A stretch of DNA of 63,911 bases, filler included, from Octopus bimaculoides (GCF_001194135.2; 8 parts of 7 records of this genome joined end to end with filler, not necessarily neighbours in it); one strand, 5' to 3'. Shown: positions 5,250 through 31,950, counted from the first letter of the whole stretch. The notes: generated by a model from the letters alone, not told the origin. Numbers and translations are program-made.

Positions 5250-6380
5250 TTTTCTCAGAATTCTTCCATATGCCCACTTCTCAAAGGTTTTTAATCTGTT
5301 TCGTTAATACTTTTATTAATGTCCATATTTCGGTTCCATACATTTAAGAGGATCATTCATAATACTTTAATCAGTTTTTTGGGGTCTTTTTTTTTTTTTT
5401 TTACTAGTTTCGATATTAATATTTGTTGATGTTGCTATAATGCTTGACATATTTTTTTTCATATGACTTTCTAACGATCACAATCCTTTTGATTTCTGCT
5501 TCACATTTCCCGTTTGCTAATTGCATAAAGCTTAGCTATATAATTTTTAGAGTCTGTTCAACTTGATTCTCCTTTGTTGTAAAATGTATTTTTGCTAGTG
5601 GTTGCTTCTTGCTGATAACCATTGATTTTGTTTTCATTACATTAATTTCTGTTCCATAGAATGTTCCTTTGTCATAAACTGTAGTTACAAGCAATAGCAT
5701 AGCTGGAGTTTGTGCCACCTGAGCAACCCCAGCCCTATACAGGCTTCTATAACAGACCGTAAAGTCCAACCGCATAAAAGTGGGCAGACACACTTGATAC
5801 TTCTCCAGCTACGTGACTGATTACAAGTTTCTGTAGTTCATTTCTGTTGAAAGTTAGCAAGGTAGTTGTTGGCACTCCGTCGCTTTCGACGTCGAGGGTT
5901 CCAGTTGATCCGATCAACAGAACAGCCTGCTCGTGAAATTAACGTGCAAGTGGCTGAGCACTCCACAGACACGTTTACCTTTAACGTAGTTCTCGTGGAT
6001 ATTCAGCATGACACAGTGTGACAAGGCTGGCCCTTTGAATTACAGGCACAACAGAAAGAGGAAGTAAGAGTGAAAGAAAGTTGTGGTGAAAGAGTACAGC
6101 AGGATTCGCCACCATCCCTTGCCGGAGCCTCGTGGAGCTTTAGGTGTTTTCGCTTAATAAACACACACAACGTCCGGTTTGGGAATCGAAACCGCGATCC
6201 TATGACCGCGAGTCCGCTACCTTAACCACTAGGCCATTGCGCCTCCACAGTAAGGTAGTATCGTCTGCATATATAGACTGCTGATATTCATATCACCAAT
6301 TGACTCTTCTGGCTTGCCTTCTATAATGTTTCTCTGAAGTTTGTTTTCAGTGCATTGCTTAAATAGAAAATATACAGATT
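5250..6380 (-). mobile_element. Decayed RTE-like non-LTR reverse transcriptase fragment, interrupted by a SINE
   Basis: Minus-strand TAT GCA GAC GAT AC = YADDT at about 6258-6271; downstream INVMKTKSMVISKK. Confidence 0.7.
5867..6248 (-). mobile_element. tRNA-derived SINE family C, full length, with 8-bp target-site duplication
   Basis: Head GTGGAGGCGCAATGGCCTAGTGGTTAAGG...GGTTTCGATTCCC carries A and B boxes. Direct repeat AAGGTAGT at 5859-5866 and 6252-6259. Second copy at 22395-22705. Confidence 0.85.
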
Positions 6381-6859: not shown

Positions 6860-7430
6860 TTTTTTTTTCTCATTTTGTTATTCTAACTCATGTCCATTGT
6901 CTGGAAGTCCTTCGTCACAATTCTGTGACCTCTTCAGCCACACTTTTCGTTTTCGTGTGTGCTCTTGCTCCACTTACTCCATTCTGTTCTTGTTAGAAGT
7001 ACACCTCTGGCCTCTTCAGCGACAGAATAGTTGTTGCTTAATAGATTGTTACTGAGTTTGATCATTTCTTCGTGGTGGGTATCACTTAAACTCACTGCTC
7101 GATGTTTTAGGCACTGAGCAATCCCTCTCTTTACATTGTATGGATGGTGGGAGTTGAAGTTGAGGTATCGTCTGGTGAAGGTCGGCTTGCGGTATACGGA
7201 TGTCCTGAATCCATACTTGGTGTGTGTTATTAATATGTCCAGGAATGCTAGCTGATTGTCTTTTTCTTTTTCCATTGTGAACAGTATGGATGGCTTCATT
7301 GAGTTCACATGATCTAACAGCACTTGGACATCTTCCTGGTAGGGACAGAGTGTGAAGGTGTCATCAACATATCGCAGCTATAGAGTTGGTTTTAGTGGTG
7401 TTAATCCTAAAGCCAAATTCTCAAAGGATA
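6860..7430 (-). mobile_element. Penelope-like RT fragment
   Basis: LRYVDDTF, LAFLDILI and TSVYRKPTFTRRYLNFNSHHP motifs. Confidence 0.85.
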
Positions 7431-13850: not shown

Positions 13851-14364
13851 GATGATGATATGTCAGATAAAATTAACCTTGGTTGGATTTGAACTCAGAT
13901 TGCAGAGACATGGAACGAATAGGAGAAGGTACTCTAATGATTCTATCCAACTCTAATGATCCTACCAAATTCGCCAAAGCTATCAGTTATTTCTTCTGGA
14001 TTTTTTGCATTTTAAGTTCCAAGGTAGATGTGGGAAACTTGTCTTTTCCTGGAGAAACAAGATGGTATCTTATAAAAAAAATTCAAAGAAGGTATAAACT
14101 CTCCGATTAAAATTCAGTTACAAGCTTATCGCTTGTGAAGGAAGTCACCGGGAAGGTCATAGTTCAACCTTATGGTAGAAGGAAAGAAATTTACGACAAA
14201 CTGAGTGAAGTGAGAGAAAGAAGCAGAAAGTATCTTCTACCTGAAGATACAAACGTTTTACAAGTTCAATGAACAAGTAGATAATCGATTGACTATCAAG
14301 TCGGGCATTCTGCTTTTGTGTTTGGTTAGTAAAAAACAACACATGATATCGTTATGAGGATAGT

Positions 14365-14790
14365 GTAAGGCGGCGAGATGGCAGAATCGTTAGCACGCCG
14401 GGCGAAATGCTTAGTAGCAGCATTTTGTCTGCTGTTACGTTCTGAGTTCAAATTCCGCTGAGGTCGACTTTGCCTTTCATCCTTTCGGGGTTGATAAATT
14501 AAGTACCAGTTGCGCACTGGGGTCAATGTAATCGATTTATCCCTTTGTTTGTCCTTGTTTGTCCCCTCCATGTTTAGACCCTTGTGAGCAATAAAGAAAT
14601 AAGAAACGTTAGCATACCGAACAAAATATTTAGCAGCGTTTCTTCCGGTTTTATATTCTGAATATTCAAATTCCGCCTTGTATTTCATTCCTTCGGAGGT
14701 CGATAAAATAAGTACGAATTGAGCATTAGGGTCGTTGTAATCAATTTCCCCTGCCCATCAGAATTGCAGGCCTTGTACCAAAATTAGAAA
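14365..14790 (+). mobile_element. tRNA-derived SINE family A, full copy plus a partial second copy
   Basis: GGCGAGATGGCAGAATCGTTAGCACGCCGGGCGAAATGCTTAG...GTTCTGAGTTCAAATTCC...GATAAATTAAGTACCAG. Confidence 0.85.
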
Positions 14791-19394: not shown

Positions 19395-19727
19395 AAAAAG
19401 CATAGAACGTGATTACAGACAAAGCCAAAATATATATATTTATATTTTACTCAAATATATCTACTAATTTTTTCAGTTCTCATAACCACTTGAACACTAT
19501 TTATCATTAGCAGGATAGGTGTAGGTTTTCCCCCAAGTGTCTTGCACCCATTAGTCAACTCTCTTCACCCTTTCAAAACACACAGGGTGACCACTTTTCA
19601 TTTTATCAATGCGGTGTTTGTAATAAAATAAATCAGTGAAATAAATCGTTTTTAATGGATTGAACTCGAAGTAGATAAAACTACAAATAAAACTATGTAA
19701 AAAGCATAGAACGTGATTACAGACAAA
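19395..19727 (+). repeat. 275-bp copy of 27390-27664, flanked by a 29-bp direct repeat
   Basis: 19424-19698 equals 27390-27664 except one substitution. AAAAAGCATAGAACGTGATTACAGACAAA at 19395-19423 and 19699-19727. Confidence 0.95.
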
Positions 19728-22394: not shown

Positions 22395-22705
22395 ATTAAC
22401 GCGCAAGTGGCTGAGAACTCCACAGACACGTGTACCCTTAACGTAGGTCTCGGGGATATTCAGCGTGACACAGTGTGACAAGGCTGACCCTTTGAACCAC
22501 AGGCACAACAGAAACGGGATGTAAGAGTGAGAGAAAGTTGTGGTGAAAGAGTACAGCAGGGTTCGCAACCATCCCCTGCCGGAGCCTCGTGGAGCTTTAG
22601 GTGTTTTCGCTCAATAAACACTCACAACGCCCTGTCTGGGAATCGAAACCGCGATCCTATGACCGCGAGTCCGCTGCCCTAACCACTGGGCCATTGCGCC
22701 TCCAC
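22395..22705 (-). mobile_element. SINE family C (3' end in gap)
   Basis: High similarity to 5940-6248. Confidence 0.85.
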
Positions 22706-23137
22706 TTTTCCCATTATAATCAATACAGAATACACTAATATAGCCCAACAATCTGGCGGTGCGCAAACTGTTTTGCTCGAATTAGTTACATTCACGCTTC
22801 AGAATACACAAGTAAAGCAGCTAACATTTGAAGATTATCGTATCGATAAAATTATCAGTAACAATTAAATCAAAAACAATTCTACTAATGATAAAGCTAC
22901 TTACACAATATTTCACACAATTCATTTTATAATCAACGTTATAGGCTGGTGAATACAGCGAAGCTTTTACCTTAAACGAACTGCATGTTACACAAATTTC
23001 AATATTACTGCACAATAAGCTGCGGAACGTCTACAAAACAAAAGCCTTTGATTCCAGTTTAAAATCGTTACACAATTGCGGACACTATTTATCCTTCAAT
23101 AGCGAAACGAATTTTACATCGCTTGAGTAATAGACTA

Positions 23138-23315
23138 ATCGCTTCTCAGCCTTTTGACCAAAATCGAAGTATTGTATCTGCTCCTATCACTTTAATATTT
23201 GATATGTTCCTAATATGGAGCCTTCAATATTAAACTGATTTTTCTTTTTTGTTCTTCGGCGAAGATTTACTTTACTTCGGCTGACCTGATATAGTAGTAT
23301 ATGCACAATTTCAAA
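23138..23315 (+). pseudogene. U2: U2 snRNA pseudogene, copy 1
   Basis: ATCGCTTCTCAGCCTTTTGACC 5' end. Branch-point pairing region mutated (GTATTGTA), Sm site TGATTTTTCT, stem III partly deleted. Confidence 0.85.
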
Positions 23316-23620
23316 CACTTTACACTTACTCATTTCAAGATTAATAAAATAACTAATAAGCACACAAAAATTCATAGAATGCCTGCAACTACCTTTAAAA
23401 TTAACACTTATCTAATAGTGATTAATTTATTACACTAGATTTGACAGAATTCATTCTAAAATCAAAGCTATTACTCATATGTACAGCGAAGCGTCTAACT
23501 TGTACTTATTGAGAGTCATACAAATTTCACAATGTCTTTACAATATAATCTTCGATGGACATCTACAAGATAAAAGCAGGAAAAAATTAATTACAAGTAT
23601 AAACCCATCTAACTCGTTTA

Positions 23621-23805
23621 ATCGCTTCTCAACCTTTTTGGCTAAGATCAAAATGTAGTATTTGTTCTTATTGGCTTAATATCTGATATGATCCTTTTAT
23701 GAGACCATCGATATTAAACTAATTTTTTAAATATTTGCGGCTAAGATTTTGGAGCTTGCTCGACCCCTGTCTGGGACTAACCTAGTATTGCAGTATGTTT
23801 AGGTG
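23621..23805 (+). ncRNA. U2: Divergent U2 snRNA gene or pseudogene, copy 2
   Basis: U2 5' end, GTAGTA branch-point recognition sequence, stem IIa, GGAGCTTGCTC, stem IV loop TATTGCAGTA. Sm site variant AATTTTTTA. Confidence 0.85.
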
Positions 23806-24253
23806 CGTGTGTGTGTGTGTACATATATATACATATATATANNNNNNNNNNNNNNNNNNNNNNNNNNNNNNNNNNNNNNNNNNNNNNNNNNNNNNNNNNN
23901 NNNNNNNNNNNNNNNNNNNNNNNNNNNNNNNNNNNNNNNNNNNNNNNNNNNNNNNNNNNNNNNNNNNNNNNNNNNNNNNNNNNNNNNNNNNNNNNNNNNN
24001 NNNNNNNNNNNNNNNNNNNNNNNNNNNNNNNNNNNNNNNNNNNNNNNNNNNNNNNNNNNNNNNNNNNNNNNNNNNNNNNNNNNNNNNNNNNNNNNNNNNN
24101 NNNNNNNNNNNNNNNNNNNNNNNNNNNNNNNNNNNNNNNNNNNNNNNNNNNNNNNNNNNNNNNNNNNNNNNNNNNNNNNNNNNNNNNNNNNNNNNNNNNN
24201 NNNNNNNNNNNNNNNNNNNNNNNNNNNNNNNNNNNNNNNNNNNNNNNNNNNNN

Positions 24254-24315
<62 letters not shown>

Positions 24316-24609
24316 ACACACACACGTATGTATATATACCAGTATAATCCAATTCAGCGAGCCACATTATTCATCTTGGTCAGCCATTTACAATTATTTC
24401 ACACATCTCTACACTCGAAACTTCAAAGCTAAAATAATATTTTACGCAAACATATTGTTTCATTTTTCATTTCCCATCATAATCCTCTCACAATATAATA
24501 CCTTAGCGCCATAGTCGTTGAGTCGCACAAAATTCCTTGCACTAATTAGACAGCAAATTTTTCACATTTCACAAGACGCACGTTGGCCCACATTTCATTA
24601 TTGCAGTGA

Positions 24610-24930
24610 TGAAAGGCGGTGAGCTGGCAGAGTCGTTAGCACGCCGGGCAAAATGCTAAGCGGTATTTCGTCTGTTTTCGTGTTCTGAGTTCAAATGCCA
24701 CCGGGGGTCGACTTTGCCTTTCATTCTTTCGGAGTCGATAAATTAAGTACCAGTTACGCACTGGGGTCGATGTAATCGACTAGTCCCCTCACCAAAATTT
24801 CAGACCTTGTTACGCACTGATTACATCGACCCCAGTGCGTAACAAGGCCTGAAATTTAGGTGAGGGGAATCGACTAGACCCCTCACCAAAATTTCAGGCC
24901 TTGTGCCTATAGCAGAAAGGATTATTGCAG
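24610..24930 (+). mobile_element. SINE family A with internal fold-back rearrangement
   Basis: Family head at about 24615; inverted and direct duplications at 24753-24905. Confidence 0.85.
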
Positions 24931-24974
24931 TGATGATCAATTCAAATCGTAACGCTCGGCAATGGATTTTATAG

Positions 24975-25195
24975 TCGGAAACTCAAAGAAGCCTGTAGTA
25001 TATATGTGTGTGTGTATACTTGTCCTCCACCATCGTTTGACAACCGGTGTTGATTTGTTTATGCTCCCGTAACATTAGCGGTTCGGAAAAAGAGACCAAT
25101 GAAACAAGTACCAAGCTTTAAAATAAATACTGGCGTCGGTTTGTTCTACTAAACGTCTCAATGCAGTGCCCCAGCATGACCACAGTCCAATGACT
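24975..25195 (+). mobile_element. SINE family B, 3' part
   Basis: GGAAACTCAAAGAAGCC...GACAACCGGTG...CAGCATGACCACAGTCCAATGAC. Confidence 0.7.
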
Positions 25196-25330
25196 TTACA
25201 ATTAATTGCTGTTGTTTCCATACAAACACGCGCGCGCACAGGCACGTGCAAGCACACACACACACACACACACACACTAATCATTCTTCAACAGTGAAAC
25301 ATTTTATATCGCCCGTGTAGTAATCATTTT

Positions 25331-25371
25331 ATTGCCTCTCGGTCTTTTGGCTAAGATCAAAGCATAGTATC
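25331..25371 (+). pseudogene. U2: Truncated U2 (first ~40 nt), part of a local tandem duplication
   Basis: ATTGCCTCTCGGTCTTTTGGCTAAGATCAAAGCATAGTATC. Confidence 0.85.
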
Positions 25372-25391
25372 GCCCGTATGATAATTATCAT

Positions 25392-25583
25392 ATCGCTTCT
25401 CGGTCTTTCAGCCAAGATCAAAAGTGTAGTATCTTGTTATTAGCTTTATATCCGATATATTCCTAATTTGGCGAACTTCGATATTAAACTGATTTTTGAT
25501 TACCGCCGATGTGTTGGAGCTTGCTCTAACTTTGCCACGAGTAGACCTGATTGATATTGCAGGACATCCAGGTGTTTGGTTAC
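25392..25583 (+). ncRNA. U2: Divergent U2 snRNA gene or pseudogene, copy 3
   Basis: U2 5' end, GTGTAGTATC, canonical Sm site GATTTTTGA, GGAGCTTGCTC, stem IV CCTG...CAGG with a 4-nt insertion. Confidence 0.85.
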
Positions 25584-26940
25584 GTAACAGAGATATGAAT
25601 AAAAGATAAATTACACTGAAAATTTTTCCAAACTTTCTCAAACTAATAACGCCATAATCAGATCGCATGCCGTATTTCTCAATTTTGAACTCTGACACTG
25701 TTCAAGCAACTTTCAACTACCAAACAACAATATATGCTTATTACCAGCGTCAATGAATTTCATAACTTCATCTCAGTCATTTTACACTCCTCTACAAGTC
25801 TGAAAAGAACCTTTACTTATTATTCAGTCCCCATAGTAATCCAAATACAATATCATACTTTAGCACAATCTGTGTAGCTTCGCATGAAATGCTTTACTCT
25901 CAGTCAATTGGCATTATATTCCCATTTCAAAATATGCAGTGTGGCTACTTTACATTGCATTATTGCAGAGTCGATAAAAAAATAATCAGTAAAATATGGG
26001 CAATATTCATAGAATGTTTGCTAATTTTCCGAAAATAAATATTTTTCTACAAGTGATAAATTAACCACTCAATATTTGTCATAACTATCAGAAAAAAAAA
26101 ATGACAGAGAGAGAACAGCTCATAAATATAGCAAAGCTTCTACCTCTTCAGTGGGCATCTACAAAATANNNNNNNNNNNNNNNNNNNNNNNNNNNNNNNN
26201 NNNNNNNNNNNNNNNNNNNNNNNNNNNNNNNNNNNNNNNNNNNCTTTCTCAAACTAATAACGCCATAATCAGATCGCATGCCGTATTTCTCAATTTTGAA
26301 CTCTGACACTGTTCAAGCAACTTTCAACTACCAAACAACAATATATGCTTATTACCAGCGTCAATGAATTTCATAACTTCATCTCAGTCATTTTACACTC
26401 CTCTACAAGTCTGAAAAGAACCTTTACTTATTATTCAGTCCCCATAGTAATCCAAATACAATATCATACTTTAGCACAATCTGTGTAGCTTCGCATGAAA
26501 TGCTTTACTCTCAGTCAATTGGCATTATATTCCCATTTCAAAATATGCAGTGTGGCTACTTTACATTGCATTATTGCAGAGTCGATAAAAAAAATAATCA
26601 GTAAAATATGGGCAATATTCATAGAATGTTTGCTAATTTTCCGAAAATAAATATTTTTCTACAAGTGATAAATTAACCACTCAATATTTGTCATAACTAT
26701 CAGAAAAAAAAAATGACAGAGAGAGAACAGCTCATAAATATAGCAAAGCTTCTACCTCTTCAGTGGGCATCTACAAAATAAACGTATGAAAGCAGATTAT
26801 TAATTATAGATCAAAGGAAAATATTTCTGATTTTACAACCGTTGAACTTAATTAATTTCAGGTATTTTTTTCTCGAAACACACGTCATTCAGCCTCCAGT
26901 TGCTTATCACATCTTATATCGGCCATGTAACACTCGTTTT

Positions 26941-27130
26941 ATCGCTTCTCGGCCTTTTGGCTAAGATCAAAGTGTAGTATATGATATTATCAGATTAATA
27001 TTTGATGTGTTCCTAATATTGGAACATCGATATTAAACTGTTTTTCTATTACTGGCGAAGGTGTTGGAGCTTGCTCTCCCTTTTCTACGTGTGGACATGT
27101 TATTGCAGTAAGGATAGGATTTAACCCACC
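26941..27130 (+). ncRNA. U2: Divergent U2 snRNA gene or pseudogene, copy 4
   Basis: ATCGCTTCTCGGCCTTTTGGCTAAGATCAAAGTGTAGTAT is the canonical metazoan U2 5' end. Stems IIa and IIb pair; Sm site altered (TGTTTTTCT). Confidence 0.9.
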
Positions 27131-28767
27131 TCCGCAACGGAAATATATACAGAAAACAAAATTAGAAGGAATATTTTTCCAAATCTTGTCAAACTAATAA
27201 CCACTCATTCGAATCCCAAACAATAATTCTCAAACATCATCTATGTTTCCTTAAACTTTCACCTGCGACAAACAATTTTCCCCAATCAAACACTACAGAT
27301 ATATATCATCAGCATCAACAAACCAGACTATTTCATCTCAACCAGCCAACTACTATTATTTTACACACCTCTGCCCTCGATTCAACAAAGCCAAAATATA
27401 TATATTTATATTTTACTCAAATATATCTACTAATTTTTTCAGTTCTCATAACCACTTGAACACTATTTATCATTAGCAGGATAGTTGTAGGTTTTCCCCC
27501 AAGTGTCTTGCACCCATTAGTCAACTCTCTTCACCCTTTCAAAACACACAGGGTGACCACTTTTCATTTTATCAATGCGGTGTTTGTAATAAAATAAATC
27601 AGTGAAATAAATCGTTTTTAATGGATTGAACTCGAAGTAGATAAAACTACAAATAAAACTATGTAAATATTAGGTTTAAACACCCCAGGCAGCCTTCGAC
27701 TTTTTCTATCCAAAAGAGGTTTTGACGCAATATTTACACGTCATTGTCTATTGTTTTATTTACTTGCAGTTCAATCGTTAAAAACTATTTCACGTTTTCT
27801 CGAAGTTTGTAAATTCTTTTGACGTAAATAAGTCAGTAATATGAATAACATTCATAGAATTGTGTAAATTCCCATAAATTATACCTTTTTTAAGTACTAA
27901 ATGTAATACTCGAAATTTGTCATGACTAATTTTTTAGATTATTTACGGCAGCTCGTAAATGTCAGTGATTCTCTAAGACTGTATATCTTGAATTTCACAG
28001 AAAATTTCAAACTTTCATTGCAATATATATAATTGCTCGGAAATGTATTCATCGATAGACATCTACAATACAAAGGCAGGAAAACATTAGATCTGTGCAT
28101 ATATATTTCCTATGAAGTTAATTCCCCATTCCACATCCATGCACCTTATTAATAGTAGATAACATCCACAAAACAAATAGCATTCATTTCACAACTACAT
28201 CTCTCTATCATTCTTCTGATGGAGGAATAGCACCCGGAACCGCAAAACTCTTTCGCTTCTTTCTAAACGTTAAACTAATATAATGTTTCTTAAAACTTGT
28301 TTCTCCTGTATTCTACACACACATACATATATATATACACACACATATAAATAAATGTACAAAAATATATACATATATATGCATATGTATATATATATAT
28401 ATGTGTGTGTGTGTGGTGCATGTGGTGTGTATGCGTGTGGTGTGTGTGCGTCCACTTAAAAATGTATGTTGTTTTAGAACACAGAATACTGCGTTGGTGA
28501 CCATGAGAGAACATCTCATATTGACTTGTGGCGCATATAAACACTCTTGATTATGTTCCGTTAACGATTTACACAAAATTGCTTTTATGCATCACAAGTC
28601 CATATCAGACACATACACACACACACGCATACACACACACACACATACACACACATGCACATGTACACGCACGCACGCACACACATACGCATACACACAC
28701 ACATACACACACACACATACGCACGCACATGTACACGCACACACGCGCGCGCACTCCATAGATATCA

Positions 28768-29010
28768 AAATCCTGGGAACTTTCACAGAAACAGTGATGT
28801 TGACAGGCTCTACCTAAGAAGAAATGAAGGTGGTAGAGGCCTGAGATCAGTGCAGATGGCCTTCGAATGCCGTATGGTATCACTCAGGCAGCACCTGCTG
28901 AACAACAACAGCAAAAATAAATATATAAATGCAGTGCTGAAAAGTGAAGTGAGCAACAATGTACGATTTGGCAGTGAGCTCCTGAAGAAACACTCTCTAC
29001 CTGATGATCT
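28768..29010 (+). mobile_element. R4/Dong-clade LINE fragment (post-RT region)
   Basis: [23 protein letters not shown] motif. Confidence 0.8.
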
Positions 29011-29019
29011 GATTTTTTA

Positions 29020-29935
29020 TTACCTATGCGGGCTAACATAGAGGGGAAAATACAATGTGATTGGGGTCACATACAATCGAATGATATAAAATGTTCATGT
29101 ACAATGAAATCGAATGAATTACAACACAATAAATTACAAGCAATAAATTACAAACAATAAATCCCAAACAATAAATCACAAACCACAAACAATAAATCAC
29201 ACGATGAGGTGTTCAAAACAGGTATGCTCCGAGCCCTGTCTTTAGCACCGACTTACTGGTAGTCACTCAATCGTGCTCACGCAGGGCCTTTCACCCCCAA
29301 CATGCGTACTACACGCGTCCATCGTTTTTTTAAATTCACTCTCTGACAAACACCTCATTTCCAGCCCCACCTTCATTTTCAAGGGAAAAGTGAACATTTT
29401 CACGAGGTCGAGGCTGGAGACGCAGGTATATGTTACGATACCTTTCATTCTCGACTTCCAAATCACTTCTCTCGCAATTGCTACTACTACGAGAAAACAA
29501 TTCTTACCTTCTTTCGTCAAGAAATCCGGCGGGTTAATTTTTACAATTGACTCAGACGATAGCTGTATTCTTCTTCCATCAGACAATAGTTGTTCCGCAT
29601 AAACCCATATTTCTGAAATACCCGGACACTGAACAATAGCGTGCAGGACGGTTTCCACGCCCTGCCCGCATCTTGGACAGGCCGTCGGCCCAGGGTGGCC
29701 GTGTCTCATGGCTTTATCCCGAACGAGTAGGGCTCTGCGGTAACACTGCCAGGCCAAAGACTTTTGGAAGTTATCCAGTGTCTTCGGCCCGAACGTTCTT
29801 CGGAACAGGCTGTCCAGCTGGTTATCATCGAGACCCAGCGTCCTTCCCAGGGCATCGTCATTTCCAGCCTCTTCCTGATGATCTATACAGCCCCAAAACA
29901 GCTGGGTTCTCTTACCTCAGAGAAGACCTGGGGGG
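29020..29935 (-). mobile_element. Tx1/L1-clade LINE 3' fragment nested in the R4-clade element
   Basis: CPRCGQGVETVLHAIVQC zinc knuckle and AREVIWKSR; AT-rich repetitive tail at about 29100-29200. Confidence 0.65.
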
Positions 29936-29939
29936 GCGG

Positions 29940-30846
29940 AAGCATTCAGCATACAAAAAAAAAAGACAATGCATGGGGAAGTTTCCCGGAAGCTCGAAGA
30001 AGACAGTAGAATTGACACAAAGCGCTGCCTCTCTTGGAACAAGACCACTACATCACATTACACTTTAAAGGCTATGCGTTTTCAATCCAGGAACAGGATA
30101 TTGTCACAAAGTACCTGGTGAACAAGAGAGACAGTGACGCTCTTGTAGTCCCAATGTGCAACCGCATGTGTATGCTATGTCATGTTTCTGTGGAAGACAT
30201 CACGCATGTGATTAGCAACTGTCCTAAAATGTCATCACGGTACTACCTCCCTATGCGGCACGATGTTGTCGATAAAACAATTTACAATGCCACCCGCAAA
30301 GAAGACTGTCCTCAAATAAACTTAGAAAATCCCTCTGCTATGGAACACATATATAAACACCAACTCAAAGAATACTGGTGGAATATTCCCATCAAAATTT
30401 CTGTTAAATGTAAACATAACAGGCCGGATATTGTTGTTTGGGACAGTCGGGCAAAGGTATATACCATCATAGAGGTCAGCTGCCCTGGAGATGTAAATAT
30501 CTCTTTGAAAATCAAAGAAAAAGAGGATATCTATGGACAACTCCTTCGAAACCTTCAGCTTCTATGTCCAGACTATGAATTCATATTCATACCAATAATA
30601 ATTGGAGCACTAGGTTTTGTTAGTAAATGCTTAAAGGAGAATCTGGATGAACTGGGATTTTTAGAAAGAGAAACTGACTGGCTCTGTGCATGGAACAGTA
30701 AAAATGTGCAAGATTTTTCTCAAGTTCTAAACGGGAATTTGTCCGTTAACTACATCCCAAAGAGGGATCCTTGTATCTTTGTTGGAAACCGGCTTCCTCC
30801 TCAGTGGAAGATTTATAATTAAGAAATAGAAGAGACATACATACAT
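29940..30846 (+). mobile_element. R4/Dong-clade LINE C-terminus (CCHC plus restriction-like endonuclease), 3' UTR and (CATA)3
   Basis: CMLCHVSVEDITHVISNC, RHD, NRPDIVVWD...IIEVSCP, IPIIIGALG. Confidence 0.85.
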
Positions 30847-30899
30847 AACTATTCTTTGGGGAAAACCACTGGATGATAATGTCTTATCCTATTCGATTG

Positions 30900-31880
30900 T
30901 CCCAGATTTCAAACAGGACGAGAAATCGTTGCCAATGAATCTACCTCTCATCTCAAATTATTTGAGAGAGTGGTGAAATCTCGAGTAACTCACTTTCGCG
31001 AAAGTAACAACCTGCATATTCTCTACCAGCTGGAATCTGCAATGGCAGAGACTGCCTGTCACAACTCCTGCTTCACTTTAATGGCATGCTAAAGGCTCTG
31101 GGAGAGGTCTCCAGGTTCCAGTGCAGATGTCATATACCTAGACTTCAGCAAGGTTGACCACAGCATCCTATTAAAGAAACTATCCTACATTCGAGACCGA
31201 GGGAAACTTAAAGCGGATTGAACGTTTAATGATGAACAGAACCCAGCATGTAATGATCGATGATGTTCCATCAAACTCAGCAAGTTATCAGTGGAGTTCT
31301 ACAAGGCACTGTATCAGGACTACTCCTTTACATTATTTACATCAATGATATCATGACTTCATCGAATACAGCAGCATTAGAATTTTTGCAGATGACTAAG
31401 CTTCTGAAGATCGTCGACAGGGTAGGAGATAGGGCAACTCTCCATTCGGATCTGCTCGGGCAATGCTGATGAAATATGTTCCACGTCATGCAGATGATGT
31501 AGCGTTCACGGCAGCGTTGGAGAGGATAAAGTTTGAGCTTTTCTAGTCGACGCCAATAATCAAGGCCTGTCATGCCATCTATCTTTTTTGTAATTGCCCT
31601 TTGAGCTGCTTTAATTTTCATGATACTTTGTTTCGTGTGGTTAGACCACAGTAAACAAACAGTATTCAAGGTGGGGTCGGGCAAAAGTGGAGAAGAGAAG
31701 GATAATGGTGTGGATATCTCTCGACTGGAAAGTTTTGAGAATCCGGGAACACATTTTGCGGGCCATGTCAACTTTGCTGTTTATATGAGCCGCCCAGCTT
31801 ATGTTGTTGTCCACAAATGCTCCCAACTCTCTGATGTTGTTGGATGCCATGAGAGTTTCATCTGAAGGGAGGGAGTATGG
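30900..31880. mobile_element. CR1/L2-type RT remnant with the 3' half inverted
   Basis: Plus strand: YLDFSK and SGVLQGTVSGLLLYIIYIND. Minus strand: ELGAFVDNNISW, RPHLEYC, QRAITKKI...LQRCRERY. Confidence 0.8.
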
Positions 31881-31902
31881 GAGTTTCAGAGTATCTTCTT
31901 TT

Positions 31903-31950
<48 letters not shown>

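What the first reader, a model, noticed from the sequence alone, without database searches (positions are those of the whole stretch)
23138..27130. Unannotated tandem cluster of four divergent U2 snRNA copies plus a truncated one
Seen: U2-like sequences start at 23138, 23621, 25331 (partial), 25392 and 26941, all on the + strand, and are invisible to the ORF track. The copies differ substantially from each other, unlike homogenised U2 arrays, yet several keep GUAGUA, stem IIa, GGAGCUUGCUC and the stem IV loop UAUUGCAG. Known: variant snRNAs are expressed tissue-specifically in vertebrates and insects. Inference: this is a birth-and-death U2 locus that may contain expressed variant U2s.
Basis: partly seen in the sequence, partly recalled or inferred. 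Interest (0 to 1): 0.7.

Follow-up and report, generated by a model that had tools for sequence, protein, structure and literature searches.

The report
Decayed tandem array of U2 pseudogenes
The window really holds four U2 spliceosomal RNA copies and one fragment in a row, but they look like an old duplicated gene cluster that has been decaying at about the neutral rate, which is an ordinary kind of genomic relic and not a set of working variant genes.

Summary
Rfam U2 (RF00004) hits lie on the + strand at 26941-27134 (123 bits), 23621-23817 (90), 25392-25588 (80) and 23138-23290 (58). A 5' fragment lies at 25331-25371. The copies share diverged upstream and downstream spacers, so they arose by DNA-level tandem duplication and not by retroposition.

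Nothing indicates working genes. Canonical U2s from other eukaryotes score 169-194 bits. Each copy carries 6-12 changes in a 67-nt 5' domain that is letter-identical in 54 of 95 reference U2 stretches. Each has 14-21% private changes, about the rate of the spacers. The 3' domains no longer fold into stem-loops III/IV. Stem retention fits random substitution. G+C has dropped to near the piece-wide background. Only copy 3 keeps an AUUUUUG Sm site, and its upstream region is displaced by a 61-nt duplication.

Copy 4 is the least damaged: its nt 1-40 are perfect. But it has lost the invariant CUGUUCU block, the Sm site and a stable 3' domain.

Gap 2 is flanked by a 537-bp duplicate at 99.8% identity and is probably a scaffolding artefact, so the true copy 3-copy 4 spacing is about 938 bp. 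Gap 1 lies in a microsatellite outside any copy.

Verdict: a dead, non-homogenised U2 array. The birth-and-death reading is partly supported. The expressed-variant reading is unsupported but not excluded. Interest is low.

The parts
22706..23137 (+). Spacer upstream of copy 1. It holds the distal upstream blocks (CAGCGAAGC..., ...TCTACAAAACAAAAGC) and the proximal upstream block.
   Evidence: 22881-23045 matches 23411-23577 at 69.8% over 169 nt. The proximal ~60 nt align with those of the fragment and of copy 4 at 66-71%.
23138..23305 (+). U2 copy 1: the most heavily decayed pseudogene. The branch-point sequence is mutated (GUAUUGUA), the U6-pairing region is mutated (AAAAUCGAA), the apex of stem-loop III is deleted, and the 3' end is degenerate.
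   Evidence: Rfam U2 58.3 bits. nhmmer profile positions 1-175. 12 substitutions in the canonical 67-nt 5' domain. Stem-loop I keeps 4 of 7 pairs.
23306..23620 (+). Short spacer between copies 1 and 2. Its distal block GGACATCTACAAGATAAAAGCAGG lies at -64 to -41 of copy 2, because the proximal upstream block is mostly deleted.
   Evidence: 23542-23589 matches 28042-28089 at 83%.
23621..23817 (+). U2 copy 2: pseudogene. GUAGUA, stem IIa and the stem-loop IV loop are kept. Stem-loop III is broken (8 of 13 pairs), the Sm site has no 3' G (AAUUUUUUAA), and the 3' tail runs into a (GT)n microsatellite.
   Evidence: Rfam 89.5 bits. 6 substitutions and 1 indel in the 5' 67 nt. The 3' domain folds at -18.1 kcal/mol, z +0.85, and is not a stem-loop III/IV fold.
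23803..24336 (.). (TG)n(TA)n microsatellite, assembly gap 1 (23842-24253, N) and (AC)n microsatellite.
   Evidence: The gap is outside every U2 body.
24340..24612 (+). Spacer remnant of unit 2, homologous to the spacers after copies 3 and 4.
   Evidence: 24370-24477 matches 27332-27449 at 70%. 24462-24606 matches 25819-25968 at 66%.
24613..24920 (+). SINE-like insertion into the spacer of unit 2, flanked by a 16-nt target-site duplication ATTATTGCAGTGATGA (24597-24612 and 24921-24936).
   Evidence: duplication. 24610-24787 matches 14364-14543 at 83%.
25299..25330 (+). Proximal upstream block of unit 3, which now sits in front of the truncated copy.
   Evidence: 25299-25370 matches 26909-26980 at 83% over 72 nt.
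25331..25371 (+). Truncated U2 fragment (nt 1 to about 39). It is the left copy of a 61-nt tandem duplication spanning -23 to +38 of copy 3.
   Evidence: nhmmer E 1.4e-8. 25307-25371 matches 25368-25433 at 78.8%. 5 of 39 changes against the canonical sequence. It shares C13U with copy 3.
25392..25588 (+). U2 copy 3: pseudogene. It is the only copy with a canonical Sm site (GAUUUUUGA). It has a 2-nt deletion just 3' of GUAGUA, GCU>GCC in the segment that pairs with the U6 AGC triad, an extra A, and a 4-nt insertion in stem-loop IV. Its upstream region is displaced by the 61-nt duplication.
   Evidence: Rfam 79.8 bits. 8 substitutions and 2 indels in the 5' 67 nt. ATTTTTG occurs only at 25492 within the finding's range. 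The 3' domain folds at -21.3 kcal/mol, z -0.3.
25589..26168 (+). Spacer after copy 3. Its first ~60 nt are homologous to the spacer after copy 4.
   Evidence: 25391-25650 matches 26940-27201 at 72.8% over 268 nt, running straight from the body into the flank.
26169..26780 (.). Gap 2 (26169-26243) plus a duplicate of 25633-26168. This is a probable scaffolding artefact that should collapse, removing 611 bp.
   Evidence: 537 bp at 99.8%, with repeat edges that coincide with both gap edges.
26781..26940 (+). Upstream region of copy 4. The proximal block lies at about -63 to -1. The distal block (GGGCATCTACAAAATAAAC, about 26757-26775) lies about 165-185 nt upstream, just before this part.
26941..27134 (+). 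U2 copy 4: the least decayed copy. Nt 1-40 are canonical, covering the 5' end, stem-loop I, the U6-pairing region and GUAGUA. But CUGUUCU has become AUGAUAU, the Sm site is GUUUUUC, and the 3' domain is unstable.
   Evidence: Rfam 123.4 bits, against 169-194 for canonical U2. All 6 substitutions in the 5' 67 nt fall in nt 41-67. The branchpoint-interacting stem-loop is not formed. The 3' domain folds at -16 kcal/mol, z +1.5.
27135..28160 (+). Spacer after copy 4. It ends in the upstream blocks of a further unit (28042-28089), which no U2 body follows. This is the right end of the array.
   Evidence: Homology blocks. No U2 profile hit beyond 27132. A microsatellite starts at about 28305.

Best explanation
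This locus is a relic tandem array of U2 snRNA genes. An ancestral U2 gene was canonical in its 5' domain, since at every one of the first 67 positions at least one copy still has the canonical base. It was amplified together with its spacer by unequal crossing-over or replication slippage into at least five head-to-tail units. The longest surviving unit is about 0.94 kb. After amplification the units were neither homogenised by concerted evolution nor kept by purifying selection. Each one accumulated its own substitutions, indels, a 61-nt micro-duplication, a SINE insertion and microsatellite expansions at about the rate of the spacers. All five U2-derived segments are therefore most probably pseudogenes that contribute nothing to splicing. 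The working U2 genes of this genome must lie elsewhere. Shown: the copies, their shared flanks, their lesions, the loss of fold stability, the equality of body and spacer divergence, and the artefactual duplicate at gap 2. Inferred: the amplification mechanism, the lack of function and the lack of transcription.
For: (1) The copies are real and head-to-tail on one strand. (2) Upstream and downstream spacers are homologous between units at 66-83% identity in the alignable stretches. The copy 3/copy 4 alignment runs straight from the body into the 3' flank at an unchanged 73%. This shows DNA-level duplication. (3) Yardstick: 17 full-length U2s on eukaryotic metagenome contigs score 169-194 bits, against 123, 90, 80 and 58 here. 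(4) Against a 67-nt 5' domain carried letter for letter by 54 of 95 reference U2 stretches, the copies show 12, 6+1 indel, 8+2 indels and 6 changes, and the fragment shows 5 of 39. There are 8-10 mismatches at the 72 most conserved Rfam model positions. (5) Over 153 columns where the four closest canonical U2s agree, each copy has 18-26% derived states, of which about 6 are common to all. That leaves 14-21% private changes with no pair grouping, a star-like pattern. This is about half the pairwise spacer divergence of 17-34%, which is the neutral expectation. (6) The 3' domains fold at -9 to -21 kcal/mol, no better than shuffles (z -0.3 to +1.5), and not into stem-loops III/IV. Two canonical controls fold into exactly stem-loops III+IV at -35 and -34 kcal/mol. 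(7) The number of intact pairs is what random substitution gives. (8) G+C is 35-40%, against a median of 48% in canonical U2. That is near the 36% of the whole piece, with spacers at 28-31%. (9) A canonical Sm site is present only in copy 3. The CTGTTCT block 3' of the branch-point sequence is present in about 85 of 95 reference U2s and absent from all copies here. In copy 4 its loss abolishes the predicted branchpoint-interacting stem-loop. (10) The 61-nt duplication puts U2-derived sequence at -24 to -61 of copy 3. Copy 2 has lost the proximal upstream block that copies 1 and 4 and the fragment share.
Against: Copy 4 keeps nt 1-40 with no change at all while carrying 6 changes in nt 41-67. 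A clean run of at least 40 nt has a chance of about 0.02 by my combinatorial estimate. Its stems are retained slightly better than random (40 of 45 pairs, p 0.05-0.17). This could mean constraint, late death or a partial gene conversion. Among copies 2-4 the most conserved model positions differ less (16-19%) than the other positions (27-39%). The bodies are alignable end to end, whereas only about a third of the spacers are. So some purifying selection after the duplication is likely, and not all copies were 'born dead'. Neither the species' canonical U2 nor its snRNA promoter motif could be retrieved, so promoter integrity is untested. Human U2 genes labelled as pseudogenes, including truncated ones, are detectably transcribed at low level (PMC8457000).
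Confidence: 0.8

Rival explanations
1. Copy 4, alone or with copy 3, is a transcribed variant U2 snRNA. It would enter a variant U2 snRNP or act as a competitor or decoy through its intact 5' 40 nt. The other copies are dead.
For: Copy 4 has a perfect 5' end, stem-loop I, U6-pairing region and GUAGUA. Stems I, IIa, IIb and III are nearly intact at 31 of 33 pairs. The stem-loop IV loop UAUUGCAGUA is kept. The clean 40-nt run has a chance of about 0.02. Divergent and even truncated U2 variants are expressed, and some enter snRNPs, in human cells (PMC8457000).
Against: It scores 123 bits against at least 169 for canonical U2. Three substitutions fall in the invariant CUGUUCU block, and the branchpoint-interacting stem-loop is lost. 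The Sm site GUUUUUC lacks both flanking purines. Sm-site deviations correlate with poor Sm association in human variants. The 3' domain is thermodynamically no better than random. G+C has decayed. Overall private divergence is about 15%, the same as copy 3 and the spacers. Copy 3's upstream region is displaced by 61 nt.
Confidence: 0.12
2. The copies are retroposed U2 pseudogenes or U2-headed SINEs (SINEU-like) that happened to insert near each other.
For: U1/U2-derived SINE and LINE heads exist in other animals (mentioned in PMC4758252). The region is rich in SINEs and retroelement fragments.
Against: Upstream sequences, which a retroposed RNA copy would not carry, are homologous between units. 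So are the downstream spacers, in the same order. There are no A-rich tails or target-site duplications around the U2 bodies. All copies are on one strand and start at U2 nt 1.
Confidence: 0.03
3. The cluster, or its apparent divergence, is an assembly artefact, for example collapsed or mis-joined reads from a homogeneous U2 array.
For: The piece has 12 gaps. Gap 2 is flanked by an artefactual duplicate.
Against: The artefact duplicates spacer only, not a U2 body. The four bodies differ at 25-32% of positions and by indels. That is far beyond sequencing error or allelic variation. Each is embedded in its own contiguous, distinct flanks.
Confidence: 0.03

Closest known systems
snRNA pseudogene clusters and 'orphon' remnants of tandem snRNA arrays, for example the human clustered U1 pseudogenes that keep flanking homology to the true genes, and the many RNU2-nP loci (own knowledge; RNU2 variants and pseudogenes are surveyed in PMC8457000)
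   Same: DNA-level duplicates that carry flanking sequence, have diverged from the canonical gene, carry lesions in functional motifs and are not homogenised. Some are 5' fragments or 3' truncated.
   Different: Here five U2-derived segments sit head to tail within about 4 kb. Units have diverged by 20-32%, with a star-like pattern. It is in a mollusc-like, AT-rich, SINE-rich genome, and the species could not be verified with these tools.
Homogenised tandem U2 gene arrays, such as the human RNU2 6.1-kb repeat and the sea urchin, Xenopus and fish U2 snDNA repeats (own knowledge; a fish example is in PMC3464664, listed)
   Same: Head-to-tail, same-strand repeats consisting of a U2 gene plus spacer. 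The ancestral unit is under 1 kb, as in sea urchin and Xenopus.
   Different: Those arrays are kept near-identical by concerted evolution and are the working genes. Here the units are 68-80% identical, of unequal length (484 bp, about 1.77 kb including gap 1 and a SINE, and about 938 bp), and damaged.
Developmentally or tissue-regulated snRNA isoforms, as in Drosophila, Xenopus, mouse, human and Bombyx (PMC4291461, PMC8457000)
   Same: Multiple non-identical U2 genes within one genome.
   Different: Own knowledge: functional isoforms usually differ by a few nucleotides and keep the invariant single-stranded motifs, the Sm site and stable stem-loops. The copies here differ at 14-21% of positions, including invariant ones, and have lost 3' fold stability.

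Membership tests
U2 spliceosomal RNA (Rfam RF00004), sequence/structure homology | Covariance-model score at or above the gathering threshold (46 bits) over the full model | tested here: met
   123.4, 89.5, 79.8 and 58.3 bits, all over model positions 1-192. The fragment at 25331-25371 is found only by an nhmmer profile.
Functional U2 snRNA gene | Score and sequence in the range of bona fide U2 genes | tested here: not met
   17 canonical U2s from eukaryotic metagenome contigs score 169-194 bits. The best copy here scores 123.4.
Functional U2 snRNA gene | Invariant 5' domain: the 5' end, stem-loop I, the U6-pairing GCUAAGAUC, the branch-point sequence GUAGUA, the CUGUUCU block and stem IIa | tested here: not met
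   There are 6-12 substitutions and up to 2 indels per copy in a 67-mer that is exact in 54 of 95 reference U2s. Copy 4 meets it for nt 1-40 only. CTGTTCT is absent from all copies.
Functional U2 snRNA gene | Sm site RAU(4-6)GR between stem IIb and stem-loop III | tested here: not met
   AUUUUUG is present only in copy 3 (25492). Copy 1 has AUUUUUC, copy 2 AUUUUUUA and copy 4 GUUUUUC.
Functional U2 snRNA gene | Stable stem-loops III and IV, which form the U2A'/U2B'' binding platform | tested here: not met
   The minimum-energy folds of the 3' domains are not stem-loops III/IV. Energies are -9 to -21 kcal/mol with z at or above -0.3. Controls L056 and L087 fold into stem-loops III+IV at -35 and -34 kcal/mol. 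The loop sequence UAUUGCAG is kept in copies 2-4.
Functional U2 snRNA gene | Pol II snRNA promoter (proximal sequence element at a fixed distance of about -40 to -65) and a 3' box | not testable with these tools
   No bona fide snRNA gene of this species was available to define the motif. There is no similarity to the upstream regions of 103 reference U2 loci. Indirect evidence: upstream block spacing differs in every unit, and copy 3's upstream region is displaced by 61 nt.
Functional U2 snRNA gene | Transcription, TMG cap and Sm association | not testable with these tools
   No expression data are accessible.
Homogenised (concertedly evolving) tandem U2 array | Head-to-tail units on one strand that share gene plus spacer | tested here: met
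Homogenised (concertedly evolving) tandem U2 array | Near-identical units of constant length | tested here: not met
   Bodies are 68-75% identical in global alignment and 73-80% in HSPs. Start-to-start spacings are 483, 1771 and 1549 bp, the last becoming 938 bp after collapsing the artefact.
Retroposed snRNA pseudogene / SINEU-type element | No homology upstream of nt 1, an A-rich or truncated 3' end, target-site duplication, and dispersed insertion | tested here: not met
   Upstream and downstream flanks are homologous between units. There are no A-tails or target-site duplications at the U2 bodies.

The most novel reading that the evidence does not exclude
Copy 4 (26941-27134) is a living variant U2. 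It would have a canonical U6- and branch-site-pairing 5' end, a rewritten segment 3' of the branch-point sequence with no branchpoint-interacting stem-loop, and an unusual Sm site. It would be transcribed in particular tissues and would either form a variant snRNP with altered branch-site or SF3 interactions, or act as a decoy for U6 or branch sites. The array would then be a true birth-and-death locus that still feeds spliceosome diversity.
Probability: 0.06. Interest if true: 0.55.

Novelty: new member of a known kind. Interest (0 to 1): 0.15.

Why it matters
As it stands it matters little for biology. It is one more example showing that snRNA gene families leave decaying duplicates behind, and that not every tandem snRNA array is kept homogeneous.

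It has practical value for annotation. These four Rfam hits should be flagged as U2 pseudogenes and not counted as U2 genes. The 611 bp around gap 2 should be collapsed.

It also offers a small natural experiment. Five copies of one RNA gene have decayed independently from a known, canonical starting sequence. That gives a local estimate of the neutral substitution spectrum and of indel, SINE and microsatellite turnover in this genome.

Only if copy 4 proved to be expressed and assembled into snRNPs would it bear on the open question of whether variant spliceosomes exist outside vertebrates and insects.

Tried and rejected
1. I tried to fetch a better assembly or an orthologous locus through exact-protein look-ups of two retroelement ORFs in the window (30034-30822 +, 29263-29757 -). 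Neither is on record.

2. I looked for a cephalopod-type canonical U2 among more than 120 metagenome loci carrying GGCTAAGATCAAAGTGTAGTAT. None shares the stem IIb sequence of these copies. The loci served only as a general yardstick.

3. I first suspected that the extra A in GAUCAAAGUGUAGUA, present in all copies, was a shared defect. I rejected this because the same form is common in other eukaryotes.

4. I looked for promoter similarity between the upstream regions here and 103 reference U2 upstream regions. Only chance 10-11-mers turned up.

5. I searched for further degenerate U2 bodies, for example after the upstream block at 28042-28089, with an nhmmer profile at maximum sensitivity. 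None was found.

6. I searched for other snRNA, 5S or tRNA genes linked to the array. Nothing reached the Rfam gathering threshold, and ARAGORN found no tRNA. The sub-threshold miRNA-family hits sit on microsatellites and inverted repeats and I take them as chance.

7. Literature on octopus or cephalopod U2 genes: none found. One search failed on a term that was too short. Yan & Ares 1996, on the invariant sequences bordering the branch-point region, is not held. Only its citation was seen.

8. I looked for a grouping of copies by shared derived states to reconstruct the order of duplication. There is no signal and the pattern is star-like.


Full report
OBSERVATION. Rfam cmscan at gathering threshold over 1-31950 returns exactly four matches. 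All are to U2 (RF00004), all are on the + strand, and all span model positions 1-192. They lie at 26941-27134 (123.4 bits; 'copy 4'), 23621-23817 (89.5; 'copy 2'), 25392-25588 (79.8; 'copy 3') and 23138-23290 (58.3; 'copy 1', with the stem-loop III/IV part skipped). A permissive run adds only sub-threshold miRNA-family hits on microsatellites and inverted repeats. An nhmmer profile of the four copies also finds the truncated piece at 25332-25371 (E 1.4e-8), extends copy 1 to 23305, and finds no other U2-like sequence in the piece. The copies are only 68-75% identical to each other.

GAPS. The 536 bases before gap 2 (25633-26168) equal the 537 bases after it (26244-26780), apart from one homopolymer base. 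The left copy ends at the last base before the gap and the right copy starts at the first base after it. This is what two overlapping contig ends look like when a scaffolder puts a gap between them. I therefore treat 26169-26780 as artefactual, which makes the real start-to-start distance of copies 3 and 4 about 938 bp instead of 1549. A real 611-bp tandem duplication is not strictly excluded. Gap 1 (23842-24253) lies between a (TG)n(TA)n run that begins inside the 3' tail of copy 2 and an (AC)n run. It interrupts no U2 body. The spacer block after it (24370-24477) matches the block about 200 nt downstream of copy 4, so the order is consistent across the gap. Its content is unknown.

ANATOMY. 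The copies are not isolated insertions. Upstream of copies 1 and 2 lie homologous blocks: 22881-23045 matches 23411-23577 at 70%. The proximal 60-70 nt upstream of copy 1, of the fragment and of copy 4 align at 66-71%. The alignment of copies 3 and 4 runs straight from the body into 60 nt of 3' flank at an unchanged 73%. Further spacer blocks recur in order after copies 2, 3 and 4 at 66-74%. A last set of upstream blocks at 28042-28089 (83% to 23542-23589) is followed by no U2 body. So this is a head-to-tail array of at least five units made by DNA-level duplication of gene plus spacer. The best-preserved unit is about 0.94 kb.

The array was later disrupted in several ways:
- a deletion of the proximal upstream block in unit 2;
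- a 61-nt tandem duplication of -23 to +38 of copy 3, which created the truncated copy and placed U2-derived sequence at -24 to -61 of copy 3;
- a 308-bp SINE-like insertion at 24613-24920 with a 16-nt target-site duplication;
- microsatellites.

ARE ANY OF THEM WORKING GENES? I used eukaryotic U2 genes found on metagenome contigs as a yardstick. Seventeen full-length ones score 169-194 bits, which is 46 bits or more above the best copy here. The extra A in GAUCAAAGUGUAGUA, present in all copies here, is common among those genes and is not a defect.

A 67-nt 5' domain (5' end to stem IIa) is letter-identical in 54 of 95 reference stretches. Against it the lesions are as follows:
- copy 1 has 12 substitutions;
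- copy 2 has 6 substitutions and an insertion;
- copy 3 has 8 substitutions and two indels, including a 2-nt deletion just 3' of GUAGUA;
- copy 4 has 6 substitutions;
- the fragment has 5 changes in 39 nt.

At every one of these 67 positions at least one copy keeps the canonical base, so the founder was canonical. The CTGTTCT block 3' of the branch-point sequence is present in about 85 of 95 references and in none of the copies. The importance of the invariant sequences bordering the branch-point region is the subject of Yan & Ares 1996. I could see only its citation, so what it shows is my own knowledge. In copy 4 the three changes in this block abolish the predicted branchpoint-interacting stem-loop that the canonical and human sequences form. 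A canonical Sm site AUUUUUG survives only in copy 3.

The 3' domains of all four copies fold at -9 to -21 kcal/mol. That is no better than dinucleotide shuffles (z -0.3 to +1.5), and the folds are not stem-loops III/IV. Two canonical controls fold exactly into stem-loops III+IV at -35 and -34 kcal/mol. The number of intact consensus pairs is 32, 37 and 40 of 45 in copies 2, 3 and 4. This is what random substitutions from a paired ancestor give, with the fraction of simulations reaching the observed value at 0.29-0.62, 0.19-0.45 and 0.05-0.17. G+C is 35-40%, against a median of 48% in canonical U2. That is near the 36% of the whole piece, with spacers at 28-31%.

RATE. Over 153 columns where the four closest canonical U2s agree, the copies carry 18-26% derived states. 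About six are common to all and are probably lineage-specific features of the founder. The rest, 14-21% per copy, are private, and no pair of copies groups together. Spacer identity in the alignable HSPs is 66-83%, which is 17-34% pairwise divergence or about 9-17% per lineage, and two thirds of the spacer is no longer alignable. So the bodies have changed about as fast as the non-coding spacer.

Three observations point to some constraint at some time. Among copies 2-4, the most conserved model positions differ less (16-19%) than the others (27-39%). The bodies remain alignable end to end. Copy 4 has no change at all in nt 1-40, which by my combinatorial estimate has a chance of about 0.02. 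I read these as signs of a period of function after the duplication, or of a partial gene conversion of copy 4. I do not read them as evidence of present function, given copy 4's other lesions.

MECHANISM AND VERDICT. The best explanation is a U2 gene array that was amplified from a canonical gene, escaped homogenisation and selection, and is decaying. All five segments are pseudogenes (confidence about 0.8).

Rivals:
- Copy 4, possibly with copy 3, is an expressed variant (about 0.12). This cannot be excluded, because even truncated and divergent human U2 'pseudogenes' are weakly transcribed and some enter snRNPs (PMC8457000). Sm-site deviations in that study correlate with poor Sm association.
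- Retroposed or SINEU-like copies (about 0.03). This is contradicted by the shared flanks.
- An assembly artefact (about 0.03). This applies only to the duplicate at gap 2.

COMPARISON WITH WHAT IS KNOWN. The locus resembles clustered snRNA pseudogenes that retain flanking homology, and it resembles dead remnants of tandem U2 arrays. It fails the defining feature of the working arrays, which is near-identical units. It also fails several defining features of a functional U2 gene; these are listed in the membership table. No paper on cephalopod U2 genes was found. The kind is well known and this particular locus is apparently undescribed, so I class it as a new member of a known kind with low interest. 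The source organism could not be verified with the tools available.

LIMITS. No expression data, no other locus of the same genome and no orthologous locus could be reached. The promoter element of this lineage is unknown. The ancestor used for the rate estimates is a proxy built from unrelated eukaryotes. The run statistic for copy 4 is post hoc.

Noticed in passing
window 19399-19727, compared with 27385-27667: A 283-bp piece of the spacer downstream of U2 copy 4 recurs 99.6% identical about 8 kb upstream. There it is bracketed by two copies of a 25-nt direct repeat AGCATAGAACGTGATTACAGACAAA (19399-19423 and 19703-19727). It looks like a recent templated insertion with a long target duplication, or a mis-assembly near a gap.
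   Followed up: partly
window 24597-24936: A 308-bp SINE-like element (24613-24920) with a perfect 16-nt target-site duplication ATTATTGCAGTGATGA. A related copy lies at 14364-14543 (83%). Its 3' part holds an internal inverted and direct rearrangement (24774-24810 matches 24868-24904 at 95%), which draws a sub-threshold Rfam MIR1120 hit of 51 bits against a threshold of 86.
   Followed up: partly
window 22395-22705 and 5938-6248: Two copies of another repeat at 92% identity over 311 bp. By eye it looks like a tRNA-derived SINE on the minus strand. One copy abuts the left side of the U2 array and a gap. ARAGORN calls no tRNA in the piece.
   Followed up: no
window 27609-27671 and 27729-27790: An inverted repeat at 76% identity over about 63 nt inside the spacer after copy 4. 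It could be the ends of a small MITE-like insertion.
   Followed up: no
window 6934-7323 (-), 28655-31916 (both strands): Open reading frames that look like retroelement fragments. I judged this by eye only. No protein search was run on them apart from two exact-match look-ups that found nothing.
   Followed up: no
window 1-31950: There are twelve assembly gaps in 32 kb, most of them flanked by microsatellites. The piece is a low-contiguity draft, so distances across gaps should not be trusted.
   Followed up: partly
L003 1-2834 (metagenome contig Ga0222713_10060925); also L034, L026, L021, L067, L038 and L049: Several eukaryotic metagenome contigs fetched as yardsticks carry compact mixed clusters of small-RNA genes. 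L003 has U2, U6, U4, U5, U1 and 5S rRNA on one strand within 2.8 kb. Others link U2 with U1, U5, 5S or tRNAs. This contrasts with the U2-only array here.
   Followed up: no
L004 1845-2066, L010 902-1015, L013 1450-1539: Among the yardstick loci, three U2 matches score only 55-89 bits despite an exact 22-nt match around the branch-point sequence. These are probably U2 pseudogenes or fragments in other eukaryotes, with scores in the same range as copies 1-3 here.
   Followed up: no
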